Of a DNA stretch of 64,000 bases, positions 23,723-64,000 are shown one piece after another; positions within the stretch are counted from its first letter, which is position 1, and every line of letters starts with the position of its first letter. Under the pieces are notes generated by a model, which saw only the letters and a program-made list of their open reading frames with translations, had not been told where the DNA came from and did no database searches. Made by a program: the position numbers and the translations under genes. The DNA is taken from positions 124,001-188,000 of the IMG/VR virus record IMGVR_UViG_3300035703_000009. The stretch is one strand, 5' to 3'.

Positions 23723-23759
23723 TAGTGTTGGTTATTTTTAAAGGTACAAATAGTCCCAG

Positions 23760-24197
23760 TGGACCCGTCGGGAATCGAACCCGAGTCTTGCTCAGCAAAT
23801 CCAGAGGACTCATTCACAGGCTTAGTCAGTTTTACGACTCTGACAACCGTTTTGGTTTTCTGGGTAGTTTTTATGGTGAGTTTCCTTCTCACCCTCATGA
23901 CGGCTTTCTACATACCTACACGTCTATCCGTAGTGTCTTTGTCAACGATTTCGCCCCCTATATGTCGTTGATCTGGAACGCCCGTGGTCAGCCACAGCTA
24001 TTAAGGGAGCCCTTCCAAGCTTGCACATTTGCTTTCGAAGGGTAAGTGCGACCCATTGCTTACGCGGCTATCGCCATTTCAGCACCAACAAAAGAGTTGC
24101 CGTTTAAATGATTCGATAGGGGATTAAAGAGCTTCCATCTAGCTCTGCCTGCATCATCTCAAAGAACCTAGCTGCCAATCAATTCCTGGTCGAGCCC
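23760..24197 (-). ncRNA. ssrA: tmRNA; tag peptide (A)GNSFVGAEMAIAA* at 24101..24060
   Basis: 5' GGGCTCG pairs with 3' CGGGTCC-A including the G3:U alanine determinant; T-arm TCGGG-TTCGATT-CCCGA; internal tag frame ends in AA-stop. Confidence 0.92.
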
Positions 24198-28951: not shown

Positions 28952-29269
28952 ATGAAATCACTCAAGTTTAACGGCGACATCACACTAGAAGAAGTATTCA
29001 ACGAGCACAAGGCGTTGATCTATGATAGTGTTGTGCACTCAATTAAAGAAAATTTATCTTCATCTAATTCAGATGATGTACCCATAATCGGTATCACTAT
29101 CAATCAAGTCGAATATTCCATCAACCTGGGTCGAGATAAGTTTGATCGATCCTTAGCGCAAGCTATCTCTTTTTATGAGGAGCTTGAGGAATATGAGAAG
29201 TGTCAAATGTGCCTAACTCTTAAACAAGAACTTAAAAAAAATAAAGAAAAAGCCGCCAATGGGATTTGA
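28952..29269 (+). CDS. Hypothetical protein with UVR-like EEYEKC motif
   Basis: [14 protein letters not shown]. Confidence 0.55.
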
Positions 29270-29882
29270 AGAAACTAACCTAAGAAACAATGCACGCATC
29301 CAAGAAATCGCAGAAAAACTACTAACTGACGCAATTACCGAAAAAGAACGTAATGAGCTAGTCACGTTAATCTCACCTAAACTCAAGTATTTCATTTGGA
29401 AGTATTGCAAAAACGAATTTGACACCGAGGAATCCCTACAGTGGGCCCTAAAAAGAATCTTTAAAAACATCTCTCAATTCAACTTTAACAAGGGCAGGTT
29501 TACTACGTGGATCTTTACCATTGCCCGTAATGAGACACTCTATTACCTTTTCTACAAGAAAAAGTACGCATGTCATGACATAGATGTCTGTCGCTCAGCA
29601 ACTGACAGACCTGATACTTCAGTCGACACTTTTGCGAACAATGTCGATATTGCCGAGCTATATTCAAAAACTCTCGAAGAGATCCATAAGCTCGAGGATC
29701 CTATTCTAAAGAACATCGCGATCGACAAGATGATAAATCTACACCGCGTAAAAGAGATTGCCGACCGCTACTCAATGAATGAAAATACAGTAAAGACTAA
29801 GCTGCGCAAGATCAGAGTCGATATAAAAACAGCGGTGTTGAAAAATAATCCACATCTAGAAGAAAAAATCGAGTTCATATGA
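29259..29882 (+). CDS. Phage RNA polymerase sigma factor (sigma-70/ECF-like)
   Basis: Region 2 [16 protein letters not shown]; region 4 [26 protein letters not shown]. Confidence 0.85.
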
Positions 29883-53936: not shown

Positions 53937-55853
53937 ATGCAGTATAGATCAGGCGTAGAGATCCCAAAGGTCTCATTTTCAGACATAGATTACACCCAAA
54001 TAAATTCCAACGCGTTCTTTATTGGGTTCGACCTCGATAACTTGGGCAAGCTCTCAAAGATCGACGAGTTTGGTAACATCACCGCGATCGAGGGAGCCGG
54101 CGGAGGCAGCTCAATTATGATTGAGGACAGTGGGTTAGGCTCAACTGTTCGTATCAATAACTGTAATTCGGCAAGCGACTGCTTTTCAACAGTCAGTGGA
54201 GGTTGCTGTAATACTATTAATGCTTTTACAACATGTTCAGGCTATATCGTATTTGGAAATACAATCGGTGGTGGTCAATGTAATACAATAAATTCAAATA
54301 GTGCTTATTATGGAAATGCTGGTGGTGTTACAATAGCAGGTGGTTTTAACAATACAACATGTTCAAACTATTATGGGTTTAATACCATAGGTGGCGGTTG
54401 TAACAACACGGCATCGGGTGATGCTTCCACAGTGGGTGGCGGGGTTAACAACCCGGCATCGGGTGATGCTTCCACAGTGGGTGGCGGGGTTAACAACACG
54501 GCATCGGGTTCTATTTCCACAGTGGGTGGCGGGGTTAACAACACGGCATCGGGTGATGCTTCCACAGTGGGTGGCGGTTTAAACAACACGGCATCGAGTG
54601 CTTGTTCCACAGTTGGTGGCGGATATAACAACACAGCATCGGGTTATTGTTTTTCCACAGTAAGTGGTGGATATTGTAATGCCGCATCATGCGATAATTC
54701 AACCGTAAGTGGCGGTAGAAACAACACGGCATCGGGTTCTATTTCCACAGTGGGTGGCGGTAGAGAAAACACGGCATTAAGTAATTATTCCACAATCGGT
54801 GGCGGTGAGAGCAATACCGCATCGGGTTATCATTCCACAGTTGGTGGCGGTATAGGCAACACAGCATCATGTAATTCTTCCACAGTTGGTGGCGGAGATA
54901 GCAATACGGCATCAAATTGTACTTCAACAGTAAGTGGTGGTTATGGTAATAATGCATCAAGTAATGGTTCAACAGTAAGTGGTGGGGCTGGTAATACAGC
55001 ATCATGTGATTATTCAACAGTAGGTGGTGGTAGAAATAATACTTCATCTGGTTATAATACAACAGTAAGTGGTGGTTATAATAATACTGCGTCAGGTTGT
55101 AGTTCAACAGTAAGTGGTGGTTATGGTAATACTATTAATGCTTTTACAACATGTTCAGGTTACAGTGTATATGGAAATACCATAGGTGGTGGTCAACAAA
55201 ATACAATAAATTCAAATAGTGCTTGTTACGGAAATGCTGGTGGCGTTACAATAGCTGGTGGTTTTAACAATACAACATGTTCAGGTTTTTATGGGTTTAA
55301 TACCATAGGTGGCGGTTGTAATAATATCGCATCGGCTAACTTTTCAACAGTAGGCGGCGGTAGACAAAACACGGCATCGGGTAGTTATTCCACAGTTAGT
55401 GGAGGATATGTCAACACGGCATCGAGTAATTTTTCCACAGTCGGTGGCGGTCAGCTTAACACGGTATCGGGTGGTTGTTCCACAGTCGGTGGCGGTTTAG
55501 GCAACACGGCATCGGGTTCTATTTCCACAGTCGGTGGCGGTTTAGGCAACACGGCATCGGGTTCTATTTCCACAGTAGGTGGCGGTAGACAAAACACGGC
55601 ATCGGGTTGCTGTTCCACAGTTAGTGGCGGTTTTTGCAACACGGCATCGGGTTGTAATTCATCGATCTTAGGCGGAACTACCAATAATACTAACTCATGT
55701 AGCTGTGCAATGATTGTTGGTAGCAATATCACTGCAAACCGTGCTTGTGCAACTTTCGTCAACAACTTATCCATCATGAATATTCCAACTTCATCTGCTG
55801 GTTTACCTGCAGGCGCGATCTATAGTGATAGTTGTGTTCTAAAAATAGTGTAA
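53937..55853 (+). CDS. Fibre-like protein with 14-aa GGGxxNTASxxxSTV repeats, Cys-rich
   Basis: Tandem 42-bp repeats; N-terminal domain shared with 55860; C-terminal motif shared with the 16904 gene. Confidence 0.8.
   Translation: MQYRSGVEIPKVSFSDIDYTQINSNAFFIGFDLDNLGKLSKIDEFGNITAIEGAGGGSSIMIEDSGLGSTVRINNCNSASDCFSTVSGGCCNTINAFTTCSGYIVFGNTIGGGQCNTINSNSAYYGNAGGVTIAGGFNNTTCSNYYGFNTIGGGCNNTASGDASTVGGGVNNPASGDASTVGGGVNNTASGSISTVGGGVNNTASGDASTVGGGLNNTASSACSTVGGGYNNTASGYCFSTVSGGYCNAASCDNSTVSGGRNNTASGSISTVGGGRENTALSNYSTIGGGESNTASGYHSTVGGGIGNTASCNSSTVGGGDSNTASNCTSTVSGGYGNNASSNGSTVSGGAGNTASCDYSTVGGGRNNTSSGYNTTVSGGYNNTASGCSSTVSGGYGNTINAFTTCSGYSVYGNTIGGGQQNTINSNSACYGNAGGVTIAGGFNNTTCSGFYGFNTIGGGCNNIASANFSTVGGGRQNTASGSYSTVSGGYVNTASSNFSTVGGGQLNTVSGGCSTVGGGLGNTASGSISTVGGGLGNTASGSISTVGGGRQNTASGCCSTVSGGFCNTASGCNSSILGGTTNNTNSCSCAMIVGSNITANRACATFVNNLSIMNIPTSSAGLPAGAIYSDSCVLKIV
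54722..54850 (+). repeat. 129-bp block identical (inverted) to 18849..18977
   Basis: Base-by-base comparison of the two fibre genes. Confidence 0.85.
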
Positions 55854-55859
55854 TAATAA

Positions 55860-57251
55860 ATGTACAAATCAGGCATAGAAATTCCAAAAGTAGACTTTTC
55901 AATCATCAGCTGTAACCGGATTGCGGCTGGCAGCTACTTTATCGGTTTCAACCTTGGAAACAGCGGTAAGCTCTCAAAGATGGACTGTAACGGCATCATC
56001 ACCGTGATCGAGGGAGCCGGCTCTTCGATCTATGAAGAGGACTCTGGTGTTAGCTCAGCCCTGCGTACGGGTGCAGGTTCGGTTCCGAGTGACTATGCGA
56101 CGGTGAGCGGCGGTCAGTGCAACCTAATCACGGCTCCAAGCGGCGGAGCTACTAGCTGGCTAGTGACTCAGAACCCGGCGAATCCAATCGATTATAGTGA
56201 CGCGGTCACCCAAGACTCGACCACTGGAGCCGGTGTAGGCGCAGCTATCCTCATCGACATTGTTGCCGGTACAACATCAGTAAATCTAACGTTCAATCCA
56301 GGCCAAGGCTATCAGGTAGGAGATCTCATCACGATATTAGGCTCGCAAGTCGGCGGCTCAGACGGAGTAGATGACGTCATCCTGCAAGTCGATTCAGTAT
56401 TTTCAGGCAGTTCGTTTATTGGATCCGGCTGCTCAAACTCAATCGCTGGCTTGGGATCGTCAATCGTTGGTGGAGTGGGTAACACAATCGACCAAGGCGG
56501 TTATGGTTCGTTCATTGGAGGTGGTAACGATAACTTAGTGTGTGCTCCGTATGGAACTGTCGCAGGCGGGCTTAATAACGTATCGACTAACGTAGGATCG
56601 TCAATAGTTGGTGGAGCATTTAACACTACTTCTGAAACAGGTTCAACCGTAGGTGGCGGGGTTAACAACACGTCATCGGGTTTTTTTTCAACAGTAGGTG
56701 GCGGTGAGAGCAATACCGCATCGTGTTGTTTTTCAACAGTAGGTGGCGGAGGTGCCAACACGGCATCGGGTTATTATTCCACAGTTAGTGGCGGCGGAAG
56801 CAACACGGCATCAAATCAATATTCCACAGTTAGTGGTGGTAGACAAAACACGGCATTATGTTGTTATTCCACAGTTAGTGGCGGTTTTTGCAACACGGCA
56901 TCGAGTTATTCTTCCACAGTGGGTGGCGGTAAATGCAACACGTCATCATGTGATTCTTCCACAGTAAGTGGCGGATTTAGCAACACAGCATCGGGTTATT
57001 ATTCCACAGTTAGTGGCGGATGTAGAAACACGGCATCGGGTAGTTATTCCGGCATATTAGGTGGTCAAGGTAACAATATTTGTGGTTGTAACTGTAGCTT
57101 CATCGTTGGTAGCAATATATGTGCTGACCGTACATGTACAACGTTTGTTAACACATTATCAGTAAAGAACATGCCGACTGAATCTGATCTGCCTTTACCT
57201 AGCGGAGTGATCTATCTTTGCACAGGTGATGGGACGCTAAGAATCGCCTAA
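55860..57251 (+). CDS. Fibre-like repeat protein, paralog
   Basis: Same N-terminus (SG.EIPKV.F...FIGF.L.N.GKLSK.D), GQGYQVGD insert module and 14-aa repeats. Confidence 0.8.
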   Translation: MYKSGIEIPKVDFSIISCNRIAAGSYFIGFNLGNSGKLSKMDCNGIITVIEGAGSSIYEEDSGVSSALRTGAGSVPSDYATVSGGQCNLITAPSGGATSWLVTQNPANPIDYSDAVTQDSTTGAGVGAAILIDIVAGTTSVNLTFNPGQGYQVGDLITILGSQVGGSDGVDDVILQVDSVFSGSSFIGSGCSNSIAGLGSSIVGGVGNTIDQGGYGSFIGGGNDNLVCAPYGTVAGGLNNVSTNVGSSIVGGAFNTTSETGSTVGGGVNNTSSGFFSTVGGGESNTASCCFSTVGGGGANTASGYYSTVSGGGSNTASNQYSTVSGGRQNTALCCYSTVSGGFCNTASSYSSTVGGGKCNTSSCDSSTVSGGFSNTASGYYSTVSGGCRNTASGSYSGILGGQGNNICGCNCSFIVGSNICADRTCTTFVNTLSVKNMPTESDLPLPSGVIYLCTGDGTLRIA

Positions 57252-57287: not shown

Positions 57288-57605
57288 ATGAGCACATTCA
57301 ACACAATACACGTATTTGGATTTGGAAAGATCCAGGTGGTAAAAGAAAACGGCGGAACGCTAGACTCTTCTGCAGTAACTTCCTTAGCTACTTTTGTTGA
57401 CCACATCAAGGGATTTAAACCAGCTGACGTCACACTAAGCGACTATCACGTGATCCACATTTTCAATAATTTTGACATCAAGTACTTGGGTAAGAATGAT
57501 GGTAATTTCAAGGTAAAGAATCAATTTAGCGTAAAGCTTAGCGACGTAGACGCAACTATCTACAATAACTTCGTGAACGAGGTAATTTCCATGTTACCGG
57601 CTTAA
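57288..57605 (+). CDS. Small protein, paralog of 53401..53724
   Basis: Clear sequence similarity to the paralog. Confidence 0.7.
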   Translation: MSTFNTIHVFGFGKIQVVKENGGTLDSSAVTSLATFVDHIKGFKPADVTLSDYHVIHIFNNFDIKYLGKNDGNFKVKNQFSVKLSDVDATIYNNFVNEVISMLPA

Positions 57606-58420
57606 TAGTACTTAAACTCGTCGTAGAACCACTTGTAATTGGTCTTAATCCAGTTACTAGCATATGTTCCTAACACTTCCTTGTAATTTTCCTTTAGAGG
57701 TTCGATTTTCGTACGAATCTGGTGATCGCCATAGATGCCATACACCTCATCATCCTCTTGAGTTATCTGCTCAACTCGATCGAAGTCATGCTCATAATAA
57801 GGCACGCCTAAATACTCGTATACTCTAGCCATTTCTTTGGCAGGGTTGCTAGTAAATTCCTCAAACTTAATGAATAGCATCTTCTTGTTGATTCCCTCCT
57901 TAAAGATCTGCTGCAATCGTTCGACGGCAAGCCCAACAGGCTGACTCTGTGCCCAAATGTCGATGCGTTTCTCGGTGGTGGTGCCTTGCATCGCTGCGTG
58001 GTTCACTATTCCTGAGTCCTTATCCTGGTTCTTTCTAAAGTTCTTCTCCATAGATGCAAAGACTCCGCGTAGGTCTCGTACCATGCACACTATCTTGGGA
58101 TCCGGATAGAAGGAATTAAGGAAGCCATAGTGAATGCCCCAACCGCGGCTCTTGTCCAAGACGTATGGTTTATCAGTTATCTCATTGAAGAAACCAGTTA
58201 ATCCAGCATTGCAGAATCCTGCAAATCCCTTGCGCATCAGGGATGAATCCTGGGCCTTAAATTCAGGCGAGTTAGTGTAATTATTACGTGCAGCGTAGAC
58301 TAACTCTAGGAGGCCTGAAGTAGGCGTCACATAGAATTTTGGGTTCTGACCCATCACGTTCTGGAAAAGGGTGGAACCTGCACGTGGCAGGCTCGCTTGA
58401 AAAAAGATCTTTTGTACCAT
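57602..58420 (-). CDS. Sulfotransferase
   Basis: SLPRAGSTL 5'-PSB loop; MVRD...S 3'-PB motif; IKFEEF..NP. Confidence 0.85.
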   Translation of the reverse strand: MVQKIFFQASLPRAGSTLFQNVMGQNPKFYVTPTSGLLELVYAARNNYTNSPEFKAQDSSLMRKGFAGFCNAGLTGFFNEITDKPYVLDKSRGWGIHYGFLNSFYPDPKIVCMVRDLRGVFASMEKNFRKNQDKDSGIVNHAAMQGTTTEKRIDIWAQSQPVGLAVERLQQIFKEGINKKMLFIKFEEFTSNPAKEMARVYEYLGVPYYEHDFDRVEQITQEDDEVYGIYGDHQIRTKIEPLKENYKEVLGTYASNWIKTNYKWFYDEFKYY

Positions 58421-59304
58421 TAGATTTGATTTATTGAGTTGAGCACCTCTGAGCTGTCAAAGATGTTAAGGTCGGTGAGCGGACACTCATGCAAGTTGCC
58501 GTGGAATCCATAGTCGAACAAGTAGCTGTCGGGCAGCTTAAAGTCCTCTGGTAGGTTCGCGCAGACGTTGTTGTGTATCGAGTAACCAAATATCTTCGGT
58601 GAGGTACCGATCCATAATACTGTAGAAGGTAGCTTTAAGGCAGCGGCTGCGTGCTGCAAGCATGAGTCAATGAGCACTCTCTTGCTAGAGTAAAGCAGCA
58701 AAGAAAATAGCTCCATATTAGACATTGGTGCAAATATCGCTTCTGCTCCAGGAACGGCTTGTCCCTGCTCTCTACACACTTGGATGATGTGATACTGACC
58801 TGAAAAAGCCTTCACTATCTCTTCGACTAGAGAAAACGGCATGTCTCGAGTCCATGAATATGGATATGGTTGGTCTTTGATCGGGCCGCCATTGGATTGG
58901 ATGACCATGATCGGTCGATTGCGAGTCCATTTAGTGTAGCCATACTGACGCTGCCGAATGTTGAACACCAGATCTGGGCTCTCGCCTTCGTATTTTAAGT
59001 CGTATAGCTTACACCAGTTCTCGACAAGAGATAACTGTTTGTGCACGTGCTCGGTGGTAAAATAGGGCTCGTGCTTAAAGATCAAGGTGTCCTGATCCTT
59101 AATGTAGTCCTGATAAAAGTATGGAGTGGCACCGATGCGATACACTCGATCAATGAATCCCAGATTCAAAAAGATCTCTGGATAGGCACACACCACAATG
59201 AGCTTACGATCGGGGTGGTTATTTTTGATGCACTGGGCAACGGCAGTTGCCGCTACATGCTTACCGAGTCCTCCCTCGATGTGAAACAAGCAGTATTTGT
59301 TCAT
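58420..59304 (-). CDS. Glycosyltransferase, GT9 (heptosyltransferase)-like
   Basis: GGLGK...AT and LIDSCLQHAAAAL..PSTVLW. Confidence 0.75.
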   Translation of the reverse strand: MNKYCLFHIEGGLGKHVAATAVAQCIKNNHPDRKLIVVCAYPEIFLNLGFIDRVYRIGATPYFYQDYIKDQDTLIFKHEPYFTTEHVHKQLSLVENWCKLYDLKYEGESPDLVFNIRQRQYGYTKWTRNRPIMVIQSNGGPIKDQPYPYSWTRDMPFSLVEEIVKAFSGQYHIIQVCREQGQAVPGAEAIFAPMSNMELFSLLLYSSKRVLIDSCLQHAAAALKLPSTVLWIGTSPKIFGYSIHNNVCANLPEDFKLPDSYLFDYGFHGNLHECPLTDLNIFDSSEVLNSINQI

Positions 59305-59711
59305 GGGTTAGCTTTATTTTTTAGCAGCTCAATCAATAGATTGTGAGCATTTATATCTACTAAGGATTTCCATTCAGTTTCTCCAGATAGCACCTGTCTA
59401 CGAATTTCTGTCGCAGAGATATTAGCGGTTACTTGGTCTACCTGGATCTCCTTTACTTCATAACCGACCCCTCTACCGTAATTCACGCTGGCTATGTCAG
59501 GTATGATTATCACCTTGACGAGAGGGTTTCCTCGATAAATCTCTTCCCATAGCCGCTTGACTTCCTCTGCAGATAGCGGGTTCTTGTCGTCTGGTTCAAC
59601 GTCGCGAACTGCAATTAGCACTGGCAGCCCCCGGTCTAGGTATTCTTTAAAGATTGTCTGGTGGCCTTTGTGCGGAGACTGATAGCGACCGATAAAAAGG
59701 TTGTATACCAT
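59301..59711 (-). CDS. HIGH-family nucleotidyltransferase (cytidylyl/adenylyltransferase)
   Basis: FIGRYQSPHKGH and ISATEIR motifs. Confidence 0.8.
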   Translation of the reverse strand: MVYNLFIGRYQSPHKGHQTIFKEYLDRGLPVLIAVRDVEPDDKNPLSAEEVKRLWEEIYRGNPLVKVIIIPDIASVNYGRGVGYEVKEIQVDQVTANISATEIRRQVLSGETEWKSLVDINAHNLLIELLKNKANP

Positions 59712-59717
59712 AATTAT

Positions 59718-59963
59718 TTAAGTTTTTATTTTCTTGACACCAAAGGGTATAGCGTACCAAATTCGTTCGTGTATGTAATATGTGATAATCTTAACGAAAA
59801 AATCGGCTGTTCCTATTGATAATCCTAAGTTTATATCATGGGTGACTAATGTTGCAATTAGAGAGGTGATACTTGACGAATATAGTCGATAAGTAATAGA
59901 CTTTAGTAGATGGCGTTTATGGCTAATCCATGTGTCATGGTTAGAAGATAGTTGACTATTCAT
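59718..59963 (-). CDS. DUF2061-like small membrane protein
   Basis: RHLLKSITYR...K...YYIHERIW. Confidence 0.75.
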   Translation of the reverse strand: MNSQLSSNHDTWISHKRHLLKSITYRLYSSSITSLIATLVTHDINLGLSIGTADFFVKIITYYIHERIWYAIPFGVKKIKT

Positions 59964-60384
59964 TAGTAAGGTAATCTACTATTTTTTGAATGCACTCGTC
60001 CAACTTAAAGTCAGTGTTGACTGCTAAGTAGTCGTGTTGAGGCACTGCATAGTCTTTCACAAAGAAGTCTTCGCGACCTCTAATTTGATTGGTGTTGAGG
60101 AAGATCTCAAACACTCTTGCCGAACTCTTTAGCTCTTCGCGTAAGTCTTCGTATGGACTGACCATTGCTAGTATGGCGACATGGTTTTTTGCAGAAAGGA
60201 ATCGCGCTATGTTATATGCATTGGTTAGGTTGCGACGACGACCTTCCTCACTATAGTCCTTGTTCTTAAAGATTTCTCGGAGCTCGTCACCGTCTATTCT
60301 GATGGAGTTAGGTATCAGTTTTTCAAGTTCTCGTGCGATTGTAGTCTTGCCTGAGCCAGGCTGGCCAATCAAGTGAATTATCAT
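59956..60384 (-). CDS. cysC: Adenylyl-sulfate (APS) kinase
   Basis: GQPGSGKTT, IDGDELR, YSEEGRRRN and VSPY...RE. Confidence 0.85.
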   Translation of the reverse strand: MIIHLIGQPGSGKTTIARELEKLIPNSIRIDGDELREIFKNKDYSEEGRRRNLTNAYNIARFLSAKNHVAILAMVSPYEDLREELKSSARVFEIFLNTNQIRGREDFFVKDYAVPQHDYLAVNTDFKLDECIQKIVDYLTNE

Positions 60385-60876: not shown

Positions 60877-60898
60877 GATTTATCAGCATAAGATATTG

Positions 60899-60930
60899 AA
60901 AACCTCAACCCATAAAGTTGAGGTTTTTTT
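60899..60930 (+). terminator. Intrinsic terminator/attenuator directly upstream of the tRNA cluster
   Basis: AAAACCTCAAC-ccataaa-GTTGAGGTTTT followed by a T-run. Confidence 0.75.
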
Positions 60931-60944
60931 GTTTTTAATAACTC

Positions 60945-61016
60945 GGTCCATTGGTGTAGTGGCTAACATTCATCCCTGTCACGGATGCGCCGCGAGTTCG
61001 ATTCTCGCATGGACCG
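60945..61016 (+). tRNA. tRNA-Asp(GTC)
   Basis: Full cloverleaf: GGTCCAT/ATGGACC, CATCC-CTGTCAC-GGATG, GCGAG-TTCGATT-CTCGC. Confidence 0.92.
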
Positions 61017-61028
61017 CAGAAACATTTT

Positions 61029-61040
61029 GTTCTTTGAAAA
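61029..61040 (+). promoter_or_regulatory. boxA-like antitermination motif GTTCTTTGAAAA
   Basis: Identical 12-mer also at 63742, both directly before structured RNAs. Confidence 0.5.
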
Positions 61041-61043
61041 AAT

Positions 61044-61116
61044 GCCGAGGTAGCTCAGTTGGGAGAGCATGAGACTCATAAACTCAAGGTCAGCAGTTCG
61101 ATCCTGCTTCTCGGTA
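61044..61116 (+). tRNA. tRNA-Met/Ile2 (CAT)
   Basis: GCCGAGG/TCTCGGT acceptor, GCTC/GAGC D-stem, CTCATAA loop, AGCAG-TTCGATC-CTGCT. Confidence 0.88.
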
Positions 61117-61129
61117 CGAAAGATAAAAT

Positions 61130-61203
61130 TGCGGGGTAGAGAAGCGGTCATCTCGGAAGTCTCATAAGCTTCAGATCGGAGGTTCGAATCCTCCCTCACG
61201 CAA
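61130..61203 (+). tRNA. Initiator-like tRNA-Met(CAT), atypical
   Basis: TGCGGGG 5' end like fMet tRNAs; bulged base in the 3' acceptor strand (CTCACGCA); anticodon stem lacks the three G-C pairs. Confidence 0.7.
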
Positions 61204-61207
61204 CTAA

Positions 61208-61361
61208 GTCAGTAGCAACGTAAAAGTTACTTCGAAATCCATCATAAGGAAGGGGTCGGTGGTTCGAATCCATCTCTCGGCACTATATTAAAAACTCATG
61301 CCGAGATAGCTCAGTGGTCTAGAGCACTTTAAAGAAAAACACTTTTGCACTTTTCTCTGAC
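61208..61361 (+). ncRNA. Y-RNA (YrlA)-like RNA A: scaffold plus permuted tRNA (CAT loop, T arm, closed acceptor, D arm)
   Basis: GTCAG/CTGAC and GTAAAAGT/ACTTTTGC stems; GGTGG-TTCGAAT-CCATC; TCTCGGCA/TGCCGAGA; GCTC/GAGC. Confidence 0.8.
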
Positions 61362-61401
61362 AAAATTTTAAAAGTTCGATCACGTGTAGTACTGTATCAA
61401 C

Positions 61402-61770
61402 ATGAATGCACTAACCGACCGTCTGCTGGAACTGCCAGCCACAATCGCAGAAAATCAACGTCAGATCTTAGATTTGAGCGGTGACCTGCAACTGGTCTCA
61501 AACAACATCGTTGAGATTGAGACCAAGATAAAACTTTCTATTGCCGCAAAAGTAGATGATGCTGGCAAGAAAGTTTACTCGAATGCCGACGCAAGGGAAG
61601 CTGCCTTTGCAGAAGCTGCTGCTGACGACTTTGAGCTCATTGAGCTTAAGGACGCTCGTGACAAGAAGGAGAAGAGCCTTCAGTTGCTAAAGATCGAGTA
61701 TGAAAAGCTTAGCAACGAACAGCGAAACATCCGTGCAACGTTATATTTTCTTGCCGGAAAGAGCGAATAA
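61402..61770 (+). CDS. Coiled-coil hypothetical protein
   Basis: 122 aa, helical hairpin with KVYSNADARE turn. Confidence 0.65.
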   Translation: MNALTDRLLELPATIAENQRQILDLSGDLQLVSNNIVEIETKIKLSIAAKVDDAGKKVYSNADAREAAFAEAAADDFELIELKDARDKKEKSLQLLKIEYEKLSNEQRNIRATLYFLAGKSE

Positions 61771-61863
61771 AAAGTTTTCAATAAACTGAAAATGTTACGA
61801 TAAACCAAGTAAGTTAATCAAACACAAGTAAGTTTAAAAAAATAAAAACCTTGTACTAAAATT

Positions 61864-63597
61864 ATGGCAAAGTTCAGAAACCAAAATCTTCGTAGCACGC
61901 TAGCTGGTATGCAGCCTGATGCGAAGTTGGTTGAAGCAGCAAAGCTGCCGAAGCCAGACACCAAGAATCGTCAAGGAAACGACGCGTACTCACTCGACAA
62001 GTGGCTCCGTCTCTTGACAATGCTCAACACTCTCAAGCTTGAGAGCCAGTTCTATCGTTCTGAGAACGAGACGATGCGCGAGCTCAAAGCGTTAGTCGAT
62101 GAGTGTGCTAAGGAGGACGCTTACTTTGTTGCTCAAGCAATCGTGTACTCACGTTGCGTAGGTGAAGGAATGCGTTCAGTAAACCACTTGGCTGCAAGCT
62201 ACCTAGCGCCACACTGCGCTGGTCAAGAATGGGCAAAGCGTTTCTACTCACTGTGGAACAAGAAGACCCAATCTGGCGGTACCCTCTTCAGACCTGACGA
62301 CATGTCAGAGATCGTTGCATGCTTTTCAGCAATGAATAAGACTGCAGTGACCAACGCGATGAAGAAGGGCTTCAAGGAAGCTCTCGAAAAGATGGACGCG
62401 TACTCGCTCCTCAAGTACAAGAGCTCTCTCGTTGACGTGATCAACCTCGTTCACCCTGACGCTAAGACAGCGAAGGCAAAGGTTGAGATCTCAGCTGACT
62501 CGTACTTGGCCAAGCTACGTGAACTTGAAAAGGCAACTAAGGACAAGACAAAGAGCAAGGCTCTACTCGAAAAGATTAAGCTCAACGAAAGTGCCAGCGG
62601 AACCGTCAAGGTTTCTGCACTGGATGCGATCATGCTGGGTCTATCAGCGTCAGCTGACACCTGGGAGGTAGCACAATCCGATGCAGGCCAAGAGGTTGCA
62701 AAGGCAGTGAAGGAAGGCAAGCTGACCGAGACTCAGGCTGCGGAAGTCCTCAAGGAAGCAAAGGCTGAAAACTGGGACGCCCTCTTAACCGAAGGCAAGC
62801 TCGGAGTTCTGGCCGCTCTACGAAACATCCGTAACATCGTGAAGACCGCGTCAAAGGGAACAACGGTAGACAAGCTCTGCGCATTGCTCTCAGACGGCGA
62901 GGCTATCCGTAAGGGTAAGATCATGCCGTATCAAATTGACATGGCTCACGAAGTGGTCAATGCTGAGTTCAGCAACGTCGACTCTCGTAAGATTGCGCAA
63001 GCTCTCTTAAAGGGTTACGAAGCTGCAGTGCCTAACCTCGCTGAAGCCCTACCAGGCAGAACTCTCGTGATGGTTGACTTCTCTGGCTCAATGTCGACCA
63101 TGGTTGTTGACCCTAACCGCAAGACCAGCTACCGCAGCTCTTGCATGGATAAGGCAGCCCTGATCGCAGCAACAGTCGCAAAGGCAACCAACGCAGACAT
63201 CATCCGCTTCGGCTCCTCTGCAGAATACGTCAGCTGGAATGCAAATTCCGATGTGTTCTCAATCGCAAAGGCAATGAAGCGTGACATGGGAGGTACCAGC
63301 CTAGCCTCTGCATGGATGGCGGCACAAAGATCTGGACGTAAGTACGATCGAGTGTTCATTCTATCAGACAACGAATGTAACAGTGGCTCAAGCTACAAGG
63401 CGTACGAAAGCTACACCAAGGCATGCGGAAGCCCATACGTTTACTCAGTTGACCTGGCAGCGTACGGAACGACCCAACTCGCAGGAGACAAGGTTCGCTT
63501 CTACTACGGCTATGGTTACTCAATGTTCGATGACATCGCGAAGAGCGAGTTCAACCCGAACTACCACCTCGAAAAGGTGAAGAAGATCGTGATCTAA
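61864..63597 (+). CDS. rsr: Ro60/Rsr TROVE-domain RNA-binding protein with vWA domain
   Basis: N..G..AY, YSLLKY, L.DVINLVHP, TWE, ALRNIRNI; MIDAS DFSGS...GGT...LSDNE. Confidence 0.9.
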   Translation: MAKFRNQNLRSTLAGMQPDAKLVEAAKLPKPDTKNRQGNDAYSLDKWLRLLTMLNTLKLESQFYRSENETMRELKALVDECAKEDAYFVAQAIVYSRCVGEGMRSVNHLAASYLAPHCAGQEWAKRFYSLWNKKTQSGGTLFRPDDMSEIVACFSAMNKTAVTNAMKKGFKEALEKMDAYSLLKYKSSLVDVINLVHPDAKTAKAKVEISADSYLAKLRELEKATKDKTKSKALLEKIKLNESASGTVKVSALDAIMLGLSASADTWEVAQSDAGQEVAKAVKEGKLTETQAAEVLKEAKAENWDALLTEGKLGVLAALRNIRNIVKTASKGTTVDKLCALLSDGEAIRKGKIMPYQIDMAHEVVNAEFSNVDSRKIAQALLKGYEAAVPNLAEALPGRTLVMVDFSGSMSTMVVDPNRKTSYRSSCMDKAALIAATVAKATNADIIRFGSSAEYVSWNANSDVFSIAKAMKRDMGGTSLASAWMAAQRSGRKYDRVFILSDNECNSGSSYKAYESYTKACGSPYVYSVDLAAYGTTQLAGDKVRFYYGYGYSMFDDIAKSEFNPNYHLEKVKKIVI

Positions 63598-63611
63598 TCA
63601 GTCACGGCACT

Positions 63612-63641
63612 GGCTAGGAAGAGGGTGACCTCTTCCTAGCC
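63612..63641 (+). other. Perfect 13-bp hairpin with GTGA (GNRA) loop after rsr
   Basis: GGCTAGGAAGAGG-GTGA-CCTCTTCCTAGCC with no U-tract. Confidence 0.7.
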
Positions 63642-63649
63642 GCTAAAAA

Positions 63650-63730
63650 ACCGAGTGGCAAGTTAAGAGTTACTTCTAACATCAATTTGAAATGACTACA
63701 CAAGCACACTCTTAGCAACATTACCTCGGT
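63650..63730 (+). ncRNA. Y-RNA-like RNA B: scaffold with short non-tRNA insert
   Basis: ACCGAG/CTCGGT, TGGCAA, GTTAAGAGT/ACTCTTAGC, TACTTC...ACAC. Confidence 0.7.
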
Positions 63731-63741
63731 AAATTTTTAAA

Positions 63742-63753
63742 GTTCTTTGAAAA
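63742..63753 (+). promoter_or_regulatory. boxA-like motif GTTCTTTGAAAA
   Basis: Second copy, directly before RNA C. Confidence 0.5.
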
Positions 63754-63759
63754 ATAAAA

Positions 63760-63885
63760 ATCAGGTAGCAACGTAAGGGTTACTTCTAGCTCAATTGGTC
63801 GAGCAATTTTCTGCAAAAAAATGGGTTGTGGGTTCGATCCCCACGAAGCGGCGAAAGCCGTACACCCTTGCAACTTTCTCCTGAT
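63760..63885 (+). ncRNA. Y-RNA-like RNA C: scaffold plus unpermuted tRNA body (D arm, GCA anticodon arm, T arm) and a GNRA hairpin
   Basis: ATCAGG/CCTGAT, GTAAGGGT/ACCCTTGC; GCTC/GAGC; ATTTT-CTGCAAA-AAAAT; GTGGG-TTCGATC-CCCAC; CGGC-GAAA-GCCG. Confidence 0.8.
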
Positions 63886-63896
63886 AACTTAAATTA

Positions 63897-64000
63897 AAGC
63901 GTAGCAAGACTAGAGTTACTTCGCATATTGGTTCGAATCCAATATTTGGCACCTGCCAAATTAGACAAATGGTTAAGTCGACGGTCTCATAAACTGTTTT
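63897..64000 (+). ncRNA. Y-RNA-like RNA D (truncated): scaffold plus permuted tRNA (T arm, closed acceptor, D arm, CAT anticodon arm)
   Basis: TAGCAAG...GAGTTACTTC; ATTGG-TTCGAAT-CCAAT; ATTTGGC-ACCT-GCCAAAT; GAC/GTC; ACGGT-CTCATAA-ACTGT. Confidence 0.75.

What the first reader, a model, noticed from the sequence alone, without database searches (positions are those of the whole stretch)
61208..64000. Ro60 locus with a modular Y-RNA-like family: one scaffold, tRNA cargo in three different circular permutations
Seen: four elements around the TROVE gene (61208-61361, 63650-63730, 63760-63885, 63897 to the window edge) share a scaffold. It consists of a 5-6 bp closing stem, TRGCAA, an 8-9 bp stem, invariant GT-TACTTC, cargo, then ACAC, the stem partner, a pyrimidine-rich strand and the closing stem. 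In A, B and C the stems differ in sequence but keep pairing (GTAAAAGT/ACTTTTGC, GTTAAGAGT/ACTCTTAGC, GTAAGGGT/ACCCTTGC); the 3' side of D is cut off. Cargo order differs: A = anticodon-T-acceptor-D, C = D-anticodon-T, D = T-acceptor-D-anticodon, B = no tRNA. Known: Ro60/Rsr binds Y RNAs, and bacterial YrlA RNAs are permuted tRNA mimics in which the Ro-binding stem replaces the anticodon arm. Inference: this is a plug-and-play Ro60 adaptor array that displays intact anticodon loops. It could act as decoy or bait for host anticodon nucleases and tRNA-sensing defences, or tether RNA repair/decay enzymes.
Basis: partly seen in the sequence, partly recalled or inferred. Interest (0 to 1): 0.93.

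Follow-up and report, generated by a model that had tools for sequence, protein, structure and literature searches.

The report
Phage Y RNAs carrying permuted tRNAs
A large uncultured phage has a Ro60 RNA-binding protein gene flanked by at least five small RNA genes that share one conserved 'handle' but carry tRNA-shaped modules wired in three different orders; this is an unusually rich variant of the known bacterial and phage Y RNAs (YrlA family), not a new kind of system.

Summary
Elements A (61207-61362), B (63650-63730), C (63760-63885) and D (63896 to the window edge, complete in the source contig) share a handle. It consists of a closing stem, TRGYAA, a 9-bp stem, GUUACUUC, cargo, the stem partner, a U/C-rich strand and the closing stem. 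A fifth copy, E, lies just past the window. The motif occurs 4 times in 64 kb against 0.08 expected, only around the TROVE+vWA (Ro60) gene.

Orthologues in over 25 related viral contigs give strong compensatory covariation for the handle and every tRNA arm. After rotation, A, D and E are called complete tRNAs.

The handle is not new. The same UUACUUC box follows a GNCGAAG-like motif in YrlA-like RNAs next to Ro60 in Caulobacter, Gordonia, Streptomyces, Xanthomonas and crAss-like phages. A and E have the published YrlA order, C the Yrn1-like order, and B is YrlB-like. I found no description of D's order (T, capped acceptor, D, anticodon arm).

Anticodon triplets drift freely in C orthologues. 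The tRNA elbow is what every tRNA-bearing copy keeps. The likeliest function is a set of Ro60-bound Y RNA tethers. The decoy idea is untested. Verdict: new variant of a known kind.

The parts
60898..60928 (+). Terminator-like hairpin just upstream of the tRNA / Y RNA block
   Evidence: 12-bp stem followed by a T run. Context only.
60945..61202 (+). Three ordinary tRNA genes (Asp-GUC, Met-CAU, Met-CAU) directly upstream of element A. They are the start of a large tRNA array.
   Evidence: ARAGORN and Rfam tRNA at 50-59 bits. L001 holds 22 ordinary tRNA calls, plus element C called as tRNA-Cys.
61207..61362 (+). Element A, a YrlA-order Y RNA. Handle 5' side: closing stem 61208-61212, TAGCAA 61213-61218, stem 61219-61227, box TACTTC 61228-61233. 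Cargo: 3-bp hairpin with 7-nt loop 61238-61250, T arm 61258-61274, acceptor 3' strand plus discriminator A 61275-61282, 17-nt A/U-rich spacer 61283-61299, acceptor 5' strand 61300-61306, D arm 61309-61325. Handle 3' side: stem 61341-61349, U/C-rich strand 61350-61356, closing stem 61357-61361.
   Evidence: Coordinates. Eight orthologues are 97% paired, with 17 of 37 pairs compensatory and the acceptor 6 of 7 compensatory; slid controls give 44-46%. Fold z-score -2.9. The rotated module is called tRNA-Met(CAU).
61402..61770 (+). Conserved 122-aa ORF between A and Ro60, function unknown
   Evidence: tblastn finds it at 39-52% identity in at least 8 related Ro60 loci. No Pfam or PHROG hit.
61864..63597 (+). 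Ro60-like protein gene, 577 aa, TROVE ring plus vWA domain
   Evidence: Pfam TROVE 33.1 bits (cut-off 23) and vWA_Ro60 31.7 bits (cut-off 27.7). PHROG 850 'RNA-binding protein', E 3.5e-37. The only solved relative by sequence is Thermus phage phiLo Ro60, 9kop/9l5y, E 2e-8.
63650..63730 (+). Element B: a short Y RNA with the handle only (TGGCAA variant) and a 31-nt non-tRNA insert; YrlB-like
   Evidence: Coordinates. The fold reproduces the handle, z-score -2.7. Hit full-length by both models at 25.4 and 34.8 bits. Similar short units follow Ro60 in other loci.
63760..63885 (+). Element C: handle plus a cloverleaf in standard order. D arm 63789-63804, anticodon arm 63806-63822, T arm 63828-63844. 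The acceptor has only 4 bp, CUUC of the box (63783-63786) with GAAG (63845-63848). A GNRA hairpin follows at 63849-63860.
   Evidence: Twelve orthologues are 95.7% paired, with 28 of 40 pairs compensatory; slid controls give 47-51%. Rfam tRNA 45.4 bits, but model positions 4-67 only. ARAGORN calls it tRNA-Cys(GCA). The anticodon is not conserved in orthologues.
63896..64000 (+). Element D, cut by the window edge and complete to window-equivalent 64032 in L001. Order: T arm 63927-63943, 7-bp acceptor 63944-63950 / 63955-63961 capped by a 4-nt loop, D arm 63964-63979, anticodon arm 63981-63997 (loop CUCAUAA), linker, then the handle 3' side.
   Evidence: One search gives the full sequence. Ten orthologues are 90.8% paired; the anticodon arm has 5 of 5 pairs compensatory and the acceptor 4 of 7; slid controls give 32-50%. 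Model R2 finds this type at 89 bits or more in 12 loci. The rotated module is called tRNA-Met(CAU).

Best explanation
These are phage-encoded Y RNAs of the YrlA lineage. They form a paralogous array of small non-coding RNAs transcribed with the phage tRNA cluster.

Each RNA pairs its 5' and 3' ends into a bulged helix. This handle has TRGYAA(N)G on the 5' strand, A-Y-UUUCU opposite it, then a 9-bp stem and the single-stranded GUUACUUC box. The handle is the docking site for the phage's own Ro60 ring protein.

The far end carries an effector module. In A, C, D and E the module is a tRNA-shaped fold with an intact D-loop/T-loop elbow. The handle leaves it at three different points: the D-arm/anticodon-arm junction in A and E, the acceptor end in C, and the variable region in D. 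B has no tRNA fold.

By analogy with characterised Ro60/Y RNA particles, the RNAs would tether Ro60 to proteins that recognise tRNA shape or single-stranded RNA, for example host PNPase and other RNA-processing enzymes. They would also gate access to the Ro60 cavity during infection.

Shown here: the genes, their structures, their conservation, and their linkage to Ro60.

Inferred: transcription as discrete RNAs, Ro60 binding, and the tether or gate role. Processing of A is also inferred. A has a 7-bp acceptor, a discriminator A, a conserved C and a long A/U-rich spacer. It may be opened by RNase P and given a CCA end, as happens to Mycobacterium smegmatis YrlA.
For: Linkage to Ro60:
- The motif occurs 4 times in the window against 0.08 expected, all flanking Ro60.
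- Neither model finds a copy elsewhere in the 64 kb.
- 27 of 33 related Ro60 loci carry 1-6 copies each, always on the Ro60 strand.
- Handle-like motifs lie next to Ro60 genes of only 32-34% identity.
- The same [5' motif]-N8-9-UUACUUC arrangement appears in arrays of 2-6 beside Ro60, mostly just upstream, in Xanthomonas, Streptomyces, Gordonia, Caulobacter and crAss-like phages.

Structure:
- Compensatory covariation supports the handle and every arm in three separate alignments.
- 47 distinct handles pair 92-95% with their own partner and 54-63% with other elements' partners.
- Minimum-free-energy folds recover the handle in all five units.

Homology to YrlA:
- A sixth unit type in relatives (F) scores 27-35 bits on Rfam YrlA. 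That matches the YrlA-like RNAs of CcrPW and Gordonia phages, at 30-33 bits.
- F shares the stretch CGACUGUUAAUCGAGAGGUC with CcrPW.

Published facts:
- YrlA features are a GNCGAAN0-1G motif near the 5' end, YUAY at the start of the V loop, and the order V-T-AS-D.
- Yrn1 has the opposite orientation.
- M. smegmatis YrlA is cut by RNase P and receives CCA (PMC4201824).
- A phage Ro60 binds phage Y-like RNAs and host PNPase in vitro (PMC12135203).

The elbow nucleotides (GG in the D loop, UUCRA in the T loop) are invariant in every tRNA-bearing type. Acceptor ends and anticodons vary. This fits the published prediction that the effector reads the elbow (bioRxiv 10.1101/312249).
Against: - There are no expression or binding data. 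The phage is uncultured and its host is unknown.
- None of A-E reaches even E<=10 on Rfam YrlA.
- The 5' motif (RGCAA) is one base different from the published GNCGAA.
- No RNA-repair or decay gene was found among the 35 larger ORFs of the window that were scanned.
- One unit type in relatives (G) contains what scores as a fully normal tRNA, 66 bits. Some units could therefore also be tRNA precursors.
Confidence: 0.75

Rival explanations
1. Anti-defence decoys. The Ro60-bound RNAs display tRNA bodies and anticodon loops to soak up or trap host anticodon nucleases and tRNA-sensing defence proteins. Alternatively, they bring repair enzymes to cleaved tRNAs.
For: C, D and E keep canonical anticodon arms: a 5-bp stem, a 7-nt loop, U33 in 12 of 12 C-type and 10 of 10 D-type sequences, and a purine at position 37. 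The D type mostly keeps CUCAUAA, and E in this phage has a Lys-UUU-like loop. The locus sits in a tRNA array of a large phage, a genome feature often linked to tRNA-directed conflict (general knowledge). Ro60 and Y RNA genes neighbour RNA ligases in many bacteria (bioRxiv 10.1101/312249).
Against: The anticodon triplet changes freely among C orthologues: GCA, UAA, UUA, UCA, UUU, UUC, UAG, CAU and others. A has only a degenerate hairpin and B has no tRNA part. No nuclease, ligase or kinase for RNA repair was found among the window ORFs scanned. Nothing was tested functionally.
Confidence: 0.1
2. Disguised tRNA genes. The units are precursors that are processed into working tRNAs, by permuted-tRNA maturation or by excision from the handle. 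The handle would serve as a processing or stabilising stem rather than a Ro60 site.
For: Rotated modules of A, D and E are called complete tRNAs. The G type in relatives scores 66 bits as a full tRNA with a 7-bp acceptor. A-type acceptor strands are followed by A-C-N-A, and three of eight orthologues encode ACCA before an A/U-rich spacer. In csAssE-Sib, two such units are annotated tRNA-Tyr and tRNA-Lys.
Against: - Anticodons are not conserved between orthologues of C.
- C has a 4-5 bp acceptor and no free 3' end.
- D and E acceptors are sealed by short, often UNCG- or GNRA-type loops.
- Turning a permuted precursor into a tRNA needs a splicing endonuclease and ligase pathway not reported in bacteria (bioRxiv 10.1101/312249).
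- The handle motif is conserved specifically beside Ro60 genes.
Confidence: 0.08
3. Decaying tRNA pseudogenes or chance similarity inside a tRNA-rich region, with no function of their own.
For: The region is dense in tRNA genes. The Rfam YrlA model also fires on mere junctions of neighbouring tRNAs (L001 9289-9401; window 61092-61172 with R2).
Against: Each unit type is kept in position and architecture across contigs whose Ro60 proteins are only 53-79% identical. Between 17 and 28 base pairs per type show compensatory change, and pairing is 91-97%. The motif is about 50-fold over chance.
Confidence: 0.02

Closest known systems
YrlA (Y RNA-like A; Rfam RF02553) of bacteria and phages (Chen et al. 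2014, PMC4201824; Wang et al. 2018, bioRxiv 10.1101/312249)
   Same: - It is encoded within a few kb of Ro60 on the same strand.
- The 5' and 3' ends pair into a long bulged stem with a conserved purine-rich 5'-strand motif.
- YUAY (here UUAC inside GUUACUUC) comes just after the stem.
- The tRNA-like module has the order V hairpin, T arm, closed acceptor, D arm, as in A and E.
- The elbow nucleotides are conserved.
- The genes lie next to tRNA genes.
   Different: - No unit of this phage reaches E<=10 on RF02553.
- The 5' motif is RGCAA(N)G, not GNCGAA(N)G.
- D and T stem sequences vary by compensatory change instead of being near-invariant.
- C and D have other orders.
- C, D and E carry a complete anticodon arm, which YrlA lacks.
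- There are five or more paralogues per locus.
Deinococcus radiodurans Yrn1
   Same: Chen et al. 2014 describe the D and T arms in the opposite orientation to YrlA. The stem-loop between them takes the place of the anticodon arm, and the Ro60 stem takes the place of the acceptor end. That is the wiring of element C.
   Different: Yrn1 has only partial D-loop features and a 6-nt 'anticodon' loop. C is a full cloverleaf that scores 45 bits as tRNA. The Yrn1 handle resembles the metazoan one on both strands. C uses the same handle as its YrlA-order neighbours.
YrlB and Yrn2 (short second Y RNAs)
   Same: B is a short hairpin-like RNA with the same Ro60-type handle and no tRNA module. It is encoded beside the tRNA-like units.
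   Different: No sequence similarity could be tested, and B's insert is not conserved in sequence.
Mycobacterium smegmatis YrlA (cut by RNase P, CCA added)
   Same: A has a 7-bp acceptor, a discriminator A and a conserved C (ACCA in three of eight orthologues). An unstructured spacer follows before the acceptor 5' strand. That layout would allow the same processing.
   Different: Processing was not tested here. D and E have sealed acceptors instead.
Circularly permuted tRNA genes of red algae and some archaea
   Same: The tRNA parts are encoded in rotated order with a closed acceptor, and the ends pair.
   Different: Those precursors are matured into working tRNAs by a splicing pathway. Here the anticodons drift, and the paired ends form a conserved motif linked to Ro60.
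Thermus phage phiLo Yrl1/Yrl2 with phage Ro60 (PMC12135203)
   Same: A phage Ro60 with its own Y-like RNAs encoded beside it. For that system, binding to Ro60 and to host PNPase was shown in vitro.
   Different: The phiLo RNAs were defined by a CGAA bulge and are not described as tRNA-like. There are two units rather than five or more.

Membership tests
YrlA-type Y RNA | Encoded within about 4 kb of a Ro60/TROVE gene, on the same strand | tested here: met
   A lies about 500 nt upstream of the Ro60 ORF. B, C and D lie 50-300 nt downstream of it. All are on the + strand. The same holds in 27 related loci.
YrlA-type Y RNA | 5' and 3' ends pair into a long stem that carries the Ro60 site | tested here: met
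   The closing stem and the 9-bp stem are supported by compensatory changes and recovered by folding.
YrlA-type Y RNA | 5'-strand motif GNCGAAN0-1G | tested here: inconclusive
   The motif here is UAGCAA(C)G or UGGCAAG, one base short of the published one. Intermediate forms (GGUGAAG, GCGUAG, GGUAA) occur in other phage Ro60 loci.
YrlA-type Y RNA | Conserved YUAY just after the stem | tested here: met
   UUAC within the invariant GUUACUUC in all units. The same box occurs in the YrlA-like RNAs of CcrPW and Gordonia phages.
YrlA-type Y RNA | tRNA-like module in the order V, T arm, closed acceptor, D arm, without an anticodon loop | tested here: not met
   Met by A and E. Not met by C (D arm, anticodon arm, T arm), by D (T arm, acceptor, D arm, anticodon arm) or by B (no module).
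YrlA-type Y RNA | Near-invariant D-stem and T-stem sequences | tested here: not met
   Stems vary by compensatory change within and between unit types.
YrlA-type Y RNA | Rfam RF02553 score at or above 69 bits | tested here: not met
   No hit for A-E at E<=10 or E<=1. The phage YrlA-like RNAs used as positive controls also reach only 30-33 bits. The F type in relatives reaches 27-35 bits.
YrlA-type Y RNA | Bound by Ro60; carries tRNA modifications (pseudouridine 55, dihydrouridine) | not testable with these tools
   Needs RNA and protein from an infected or expressing cell.
Canonical tRNA (element C, called tRNA-Cys by ARAGORN) | 7-bp acceptor stem with a discriminator and a free or processable 3' end | tested here: not met
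   There are only 4-5 bp, formed with the box. The Rfam tRNA alignment covers model positions 4-67 only. The 3' side runs into a conserved GNRA hairpin and the handle.
Canonical tRNA (element C, called tRNA-Cys by ARAGORN) | Anticodon conserved among orthologues | tested here: not met
   Eleven different triplets in 12 orthologues, while U33 is invariant.
Ro60 protein | TROVE (HEAT-repeat ring) domain followed by a vWA domain | tested here: met
   Both Pfam domains score above their cut-offs, in the right order. Sequence match to the solved phage Ro60.

The most novel reading that the evidence does not exclude
The Ro60 handle is a portable module that phages graft onto tRNA bodies at any of three or more entry points. 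The result is a panel of Ro60-tethered tRNA look-alikes, each showing a different face of the tRNA: sealed or openable acceptor, free anticodon loop, elbow. Together they would form a ribonucleoprotein counter-defence that captures or redirects host enzymes acting on tRNAs, such as anticodon nucleases, tRNA-sensing immunity proteins and decay or repair factors.
Probability: 0.12. Interest if true: 0.85.

Novelty: new variant of a known kind. Interest (0 to 1): 0.55.

Why it matters
The effector that binds the tRNA-like domain of bacterial Y RNAs is still unknown. This locus and its relatives act as a natural experiment on that question. One handle is joined to tRNA bodies in three wirings, with acceptor ends open, sealed or truncated, and with anticodons drifting. 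Only the D-loop/T-loop elbow is kept throughout. That narrows the search to elbow-reading factors and supplies ready-made variants for pull-downs.

Unit A looks like the junction of two tandem tRNAs: 3' half, ACNA, spacer, 5' half. This is the form predicted by the dimeric-tRNA origin model for YrlA.

There is also a practical point for annotation. Such units are currently annotated as ordinary tRNAs: tRNA-Cys here by ARAGORN, and tRNA-Tyr, tRNA-Lys and tRNA-Thr in deposited phage genomes. Phage tRNA repertoires near Ro60 genes are therefore overcounted.

Tried and rejected
- **Rfam on the region at permissive thresholds.** Only tRNA hits appeared, none to Y_RNA or YrlA. The apparent YrlA hits elsewhere in L001 are junctions of adjacent tRNAs.
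- **A single parental tRNA for each module.** Rejected. The best identities (0.65-0.74) barely exceed the median against all 22 tRNAs (0.56-0.67). A's resemblance to the neighbouring tRNA-Met is limited to the acceptor and D arm.
- **Collection-wide scan for the 14-base motif as a linkage test.** Inconclusive. Most of the 118 returned stretches are chance matches. Twelve have a full handle, and five of those show Ro60 inside the fetched piece. The others are short or cut.
- **Bacterial relatives of the Ro60 protein.** Only one contig was found, from an Erysipelotrichales metagenome bin at 50% identity. It has no strict handle motif.
- **Megablast against deposited phages.** No match. The terminase places the phage among uncultured huge phages and jumbo myoviruses at 30-36% identity, so the host stays unknown.
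- **Gene neighbourhood search for RNA repair or decay enzymes.** None found. The neighbours are DNA ligase, thymidylate synthase, fibre proteins, sulfation genes and T4-type structural genes.
- **Promoter and terminator scan.** Counts were at chance level, apart from one strong terminator-like hairpin before the tRNA block.
- **An alignment of short B-type units for a handle-only model.** It was too ragged to use.

Full report
**What is in the sequence.**
Window 60945-61202 holds three ordinary tRNA genes. A 577-aa ORF at 61864-63597 has a TROVE domain followed by a Ro60-type vWA domain, both above Pfam's cut-offs. It matches PHROG 850 'RNA-binding protein'. By sequence, it matches the solved Ro60 of Thermus phage phiLo.

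They share one frame:
- a closing stem of 5-6 bp;
- UAGCAA, or UGGCAA in B;
- a 9-nt strand ending in GU;
- the box UACUUC;
- a variable insert, then AC;
- the complement of the 9-nt strand;
- a 7-8 nt U/C-rich strand (A-Y-UUUCU);
- the closing-stem partner.

The strict motif TRGYAA-N7-GTTACTTC occurs four times in 64 kb against 0.08 expected. All four lie here, on the Ro60 strand.

**The source contig.**
The window comes from IMGVR_UViG_3300035703_000009 (207 kb), fetched as L001, where window position = L001 position + 57863. L001 completes element D, which ends at window-equivalent 64032. It also shows a fifth unit, E, at L001 6556-6694, after two more tRNA genes.

The whole locus sits in a tRNA array with 23 ARAGORN calls in 9.7 kb. 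One of those calls is element C. The rest of the window is a T4-type structural and nucleotide-metabolism region: terminase, gp15-like protein, DNA ligase, thymidylate synthase, fibre proteins and a sulfation cluster. No RNA repair or decay gene was found. The nearest deposited phages are uncultured huge phages and jumbo myoviruses, at 30-36% terminase identity. The host is unknown.

**Is the structure real?**
Searching viral contigs with the Ro60 protein returned 33 loci at 34-100% identity. Of these, 27 carry 1-6 copies of the strict 5' motif, always on the Ro60 strand. A script that also required the 3' partner found 61 units with 47 distinct handles. Their stems pair 92-95% with their own partner and 54-63% with the partner of another unit. 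That script selected on pairing, so this is an internal contrast rather than an unbiased test.

The units fall into types that keep their architecture across contigs. Three alignments were tested against explicit structures.

| Type | Orthologues | Cells paired | Pairs with compensatory change | Slid controls |
|---|---|---|---|---|
| C | 12 | 95.7% | 28 of 40 | 47-51% |
| D | 10 | 90.8% | 17 of 39 | 32-50% |
| A | 8 | 97.0% | 17 of 37 | 44-46% |

- In the D type, all five anticodon-stem pairs and four of seven acceptor pairs show compensatory change.
- In the A type, six of seven acceptor pairs do.

Single-sequence folding recovers the handle in all five units of this phage, with z-scores from -1.9 to -2.9. 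Covariance models built from the C and D alignments find A, B, C and D in the window. Beyond those they find only partial matches to true tRNAs and one E=0.16 noise hit.

**What the inserts are.**
- **C** is a cloverleaf in the normal order: D arm, a 5-bp anticodon stem with a 7-nt loop, a 5-nt variable loop and a T arm. Its acceptor has only 4-5 pairs, made by the CUUC(U) of the box with GAAG or AGAGG. A conserved GNRA hairpin follows. Rfam aligns C to tRNA positions 4-67 at 45 bits, and ARAGORN reports it as tRNA-Cys.
- **D** runs T arm, a 7-bp acceptor sealed by a short loop, D arm, anticodon arm (CUCAUAA in 6 of 10 orthologues), and an A-rich linker.
- **A and E** run hairpin, variable loop, T arm, acceptor, D arm and linker.
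  - In E the hairpin is a 5-bp stem with a 7-nt loop (CUUUUAC), and the acceptor is sealed by a GNRA loop.
  - In A the hairpin has only 3 pairs, one of them covarying.
  - In A the acceptor has 7 bp, followed by a discriminator A, an invariant C and a 17-22 nt A/U-rich spacer. Three of eight orthologues encode ACCA.
- **Rotated modules.** When rotated in a script, the modules of A, D and E are called tRNA-Met(CAU), tRNA-Met(CAU) and tRNA-Lys(UUU) by ARAGORN. 'tRNA cargo in different circular permutations' is therefore a fair description.
- **B** has a 31-nt insert with no tRNA features.
- **Two further types occur in relatives.**
  - F has a V hairpin CGACUGUUAAUCG, a T arm, a sealed acceptor, a D arm and a short linker.
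  - G is the handle plus a complete tRNA with a 7-bp acceptor, scoring 66 bits on Rfam tRNA.

No module has an identifiable parental tRNA.

**How it compares with what is known.**
Chen et al. 2014 (PMC4201824) established the following.
- YrlA RNAs lie within 4 kb of Ro60 on the same strand.
- They have GNCGAAN0-1G near the 5' end, YUAY at the start of the V loop, and a module in the order V, T, closed acceptor, D.
- YrlA-related sequences were reported in 22 phages.
- Deinococcus Yrn1 has the arms in the opposite orientation, with the middle stem-loop in the anticodon position.
- Each studied species also has a short second Y RNA.
- M. smegmatis YrlA, with a 7-bp acceptor, is cut by RNase P and gains CCA.

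Wang et al. 2018 (bioRxiv 10.1101/312249) add further points.
- They call YrlA a circularly permuted tRNA with a closed acceptor and no anticodon loop.
- They predict an effector that reads the elbow.
- They cite the dimeric-tRNA origin model.

Rfam does hold YrlA (RF02553, cut-off 69 bits). It gives 30-33 bits on YrlA-like RNAs beside the Ro60 genes of Caulobacter phage CcrPW and Gordonia phage Rabbitrun. It gives 27-35 bits on the F type of this phage's relatives. It gives nothing at E<=10 on A-E.

Reading those control RNAs showed that the supposedly special box is shared. CcrPW has GGCGUAG-N7-UUACUUCG, and Gordonia has GCGUAG-N9-UUACUUC. Arrays of two to six such units lie beside Ro60, mostly just upstream of it, in:
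- Xanthomonas phage 10KY502B;
- Streptomyces phage BRock;
- the crAss-like phage csAssE-Sib;
- the huge phage LR745206;
- the distant viral contig L032.

In csAssE-Sib, two standard-order units directly follow the box and are annotated tRNA-Tyr and tRNA-Lys. In the Xanthomonas phage, a YrlA-order unit is annotated tRNA-Thr.

So the handle is the YrlA-type Ro60 module in a local dialect: RGCAA(N)G for GNCGAA(N)G. Several paralogues per locus is common in phages. A and E are YrlA-order units, C is wired like Yrn1, and B is YrlB-like.

I found no description in four literature searches of the following:
- the D wiring, with the handle leaving from the variable region and both a sealed acceptor and a full anticodon arm on display;
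- the coexistence of three wirings on one handle in one locus;
- complete anticodon arms on Y RNAs.

Model R2 finds the D type at 89 bits or more in 12 loci whose Ro60 proteins are 53-79% identical to this one. It does not find that type in the other phage lineages sampled.

**How it most likely works.**
The shown facts are the genes, their folds, their conservation and their linkage to Ro60.

From the characterised systems I infer three things:
- the paired ends with the bulged TRGYAA / A-Y-UUUCU helix dock on the outer face of the phage Ro60 ring;
- the UUACUUC strand sits at the junction, corresponding to the conserved UA kink in the YrlA crystal structure;
- the far module recruits a partner.

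Across all tRNA-bearing types, the invariant parts are the D-loop GG and the T-loop UUCRA, which form the elbow. Acceptor ends are open, sealed or truncated, and anticodon triplets drift. In the C type there are eleven different triplets in twelve orthologues, although U33 is invariant and position 37 is a purine in eleven. This fits an elbow-reading or shape-reading partner better than an anticodon-specific one.

A phage Ro60 has been shown to bind its own Y-like RNAs and host PNPase in vitro (PMC12135203). A Ro60/Y RNA/exonuclease particle that reshapes RNA decay or tRNA quality control during infection is therefore the default model.

A's layout suggests it is opened by RNase P and repaired to CCA, like the mycobacterial RNA. 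This is inference only.

**Rivals.**
- **Decoy or bait.** It remains possible for D and E, whose loops are more constrained. It has no direct support, and the drifting anticodons of C argue against it.
- **tRNA precursors.** The full-scoring G type and the ACCA of some A orthologues give this some support. Truncated or sealed acceptors, non-conserved anticodons and the Ro60-specific handle contradict it.
- **Pseudogenes or chance.** Excluded by the covariation.

**Verdict.**
The interpretation as a modular Ro60 adaptor family is right in outline. The family is the known YrlA/Y RNA kind, and the proposed decoy function is untested. I rate it a new variant of a known kind. It is of moderate interest to specialists, because the natural permutations point to the elbow as the functional constant, and because these units are being annotated as tRNAs.

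Noticed in passing
window 23757-24197 (-): A tmRNA gene scores 51.8 bits on Rfam, above the 47-bit cut-off. ARAGORN did not call it. A phage-encoded tmRNA sits in the structural region.
   Followed up: no
window 61402-61770 (+): A 122-aa ORF between element A and Ro60 is conserved at 39-52% identity in at least 8 related Ro60 loci, often directly upstream of Ro60. It has no Pfam or PHROG match. It may be a partner of the Ro60/Y RNA system.
   Followed up: partly
L001 6556-6694 (window-equivalent 64419-64557, outside the window): Fifth handle-bearing unit, E, in YrlA order. It has a Lys-UUU-like 5-bp/7-nt hairpin and an acceptor sealed by a GNRA loop. It lies between tRNA-Met and tRNA-Glu.
   Followed up: yes
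L002 5841-5974 and 6231-6363; L012 5987-6118 and 2497-2628: Relatives carry two more unit types that this phage lacks within 4 kb of Ro60. F is a canonical YrlA, 27-35 bits on RF02553. G is the handle around a complete 7-bp-acceptor tRNA, 66 bits on Rfam tRNA.
   Followed up: partly
L158 (phage csAssE-Sib, OR575929) 2107-2380; L156 (Xanthomonas phage 10KY502B) 2200-2340: Features annotated tRNA-Tyr, tRNA-Lys and tRNA-Thr just upstream of Ro60 start right after a UUACUUC box inside Y-RNA-type handles. They are probably Y RNAs, not decoding tRNAs.
   Followed up: partly
L001 9289-9401, 9118-9221, 8146-8260; window 61092-61172: The Rfam YrlA model and my D-type model both give weak hits across the junction of two adjacent ordinary tRNAs (T arm of one, D arm of the next). 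This is a false-positive source. It also illustrates the dimeric-tRNA origin idea.
   Followed up: no
L001 6994-7069: An odd tRNA call: 'His', anticodon AUG at position 29, only 38.6 bits on Rfam. It is preceded by a stretch containing TAGCAA. Not examined.
   Followed up: no
window 57602-60384 (-): A cluster of a sulfotransferase, a cytidylyltransferase-like protein and an APS-kinase-like P-loop protein. This is a possible sulfation module in a phage.
   Followed up: no
window 53937-57251 (+): Two large proteins with many UspA1-type adhesin repeats. They are likely fibres.
   Followed up: no
window 29259-29882 (+): A 207-aa protein with a sigma-70 region 2 domain, probably a phage sigma factor. 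The phage may therefore use promoters of its own, which the sigma-70 scan would miss.
   Followed up: no
L155 5660-5830 (Erysipelotrichales metagenome bin contig): Downstream of the only bacterial-bin Ro60 relative (50% identity) lies GUGGUAGUGC...UAUUCG, then a tRNA-Cys call. It may be a diverged handle. The contig may itself be viral.
   Followed up: no
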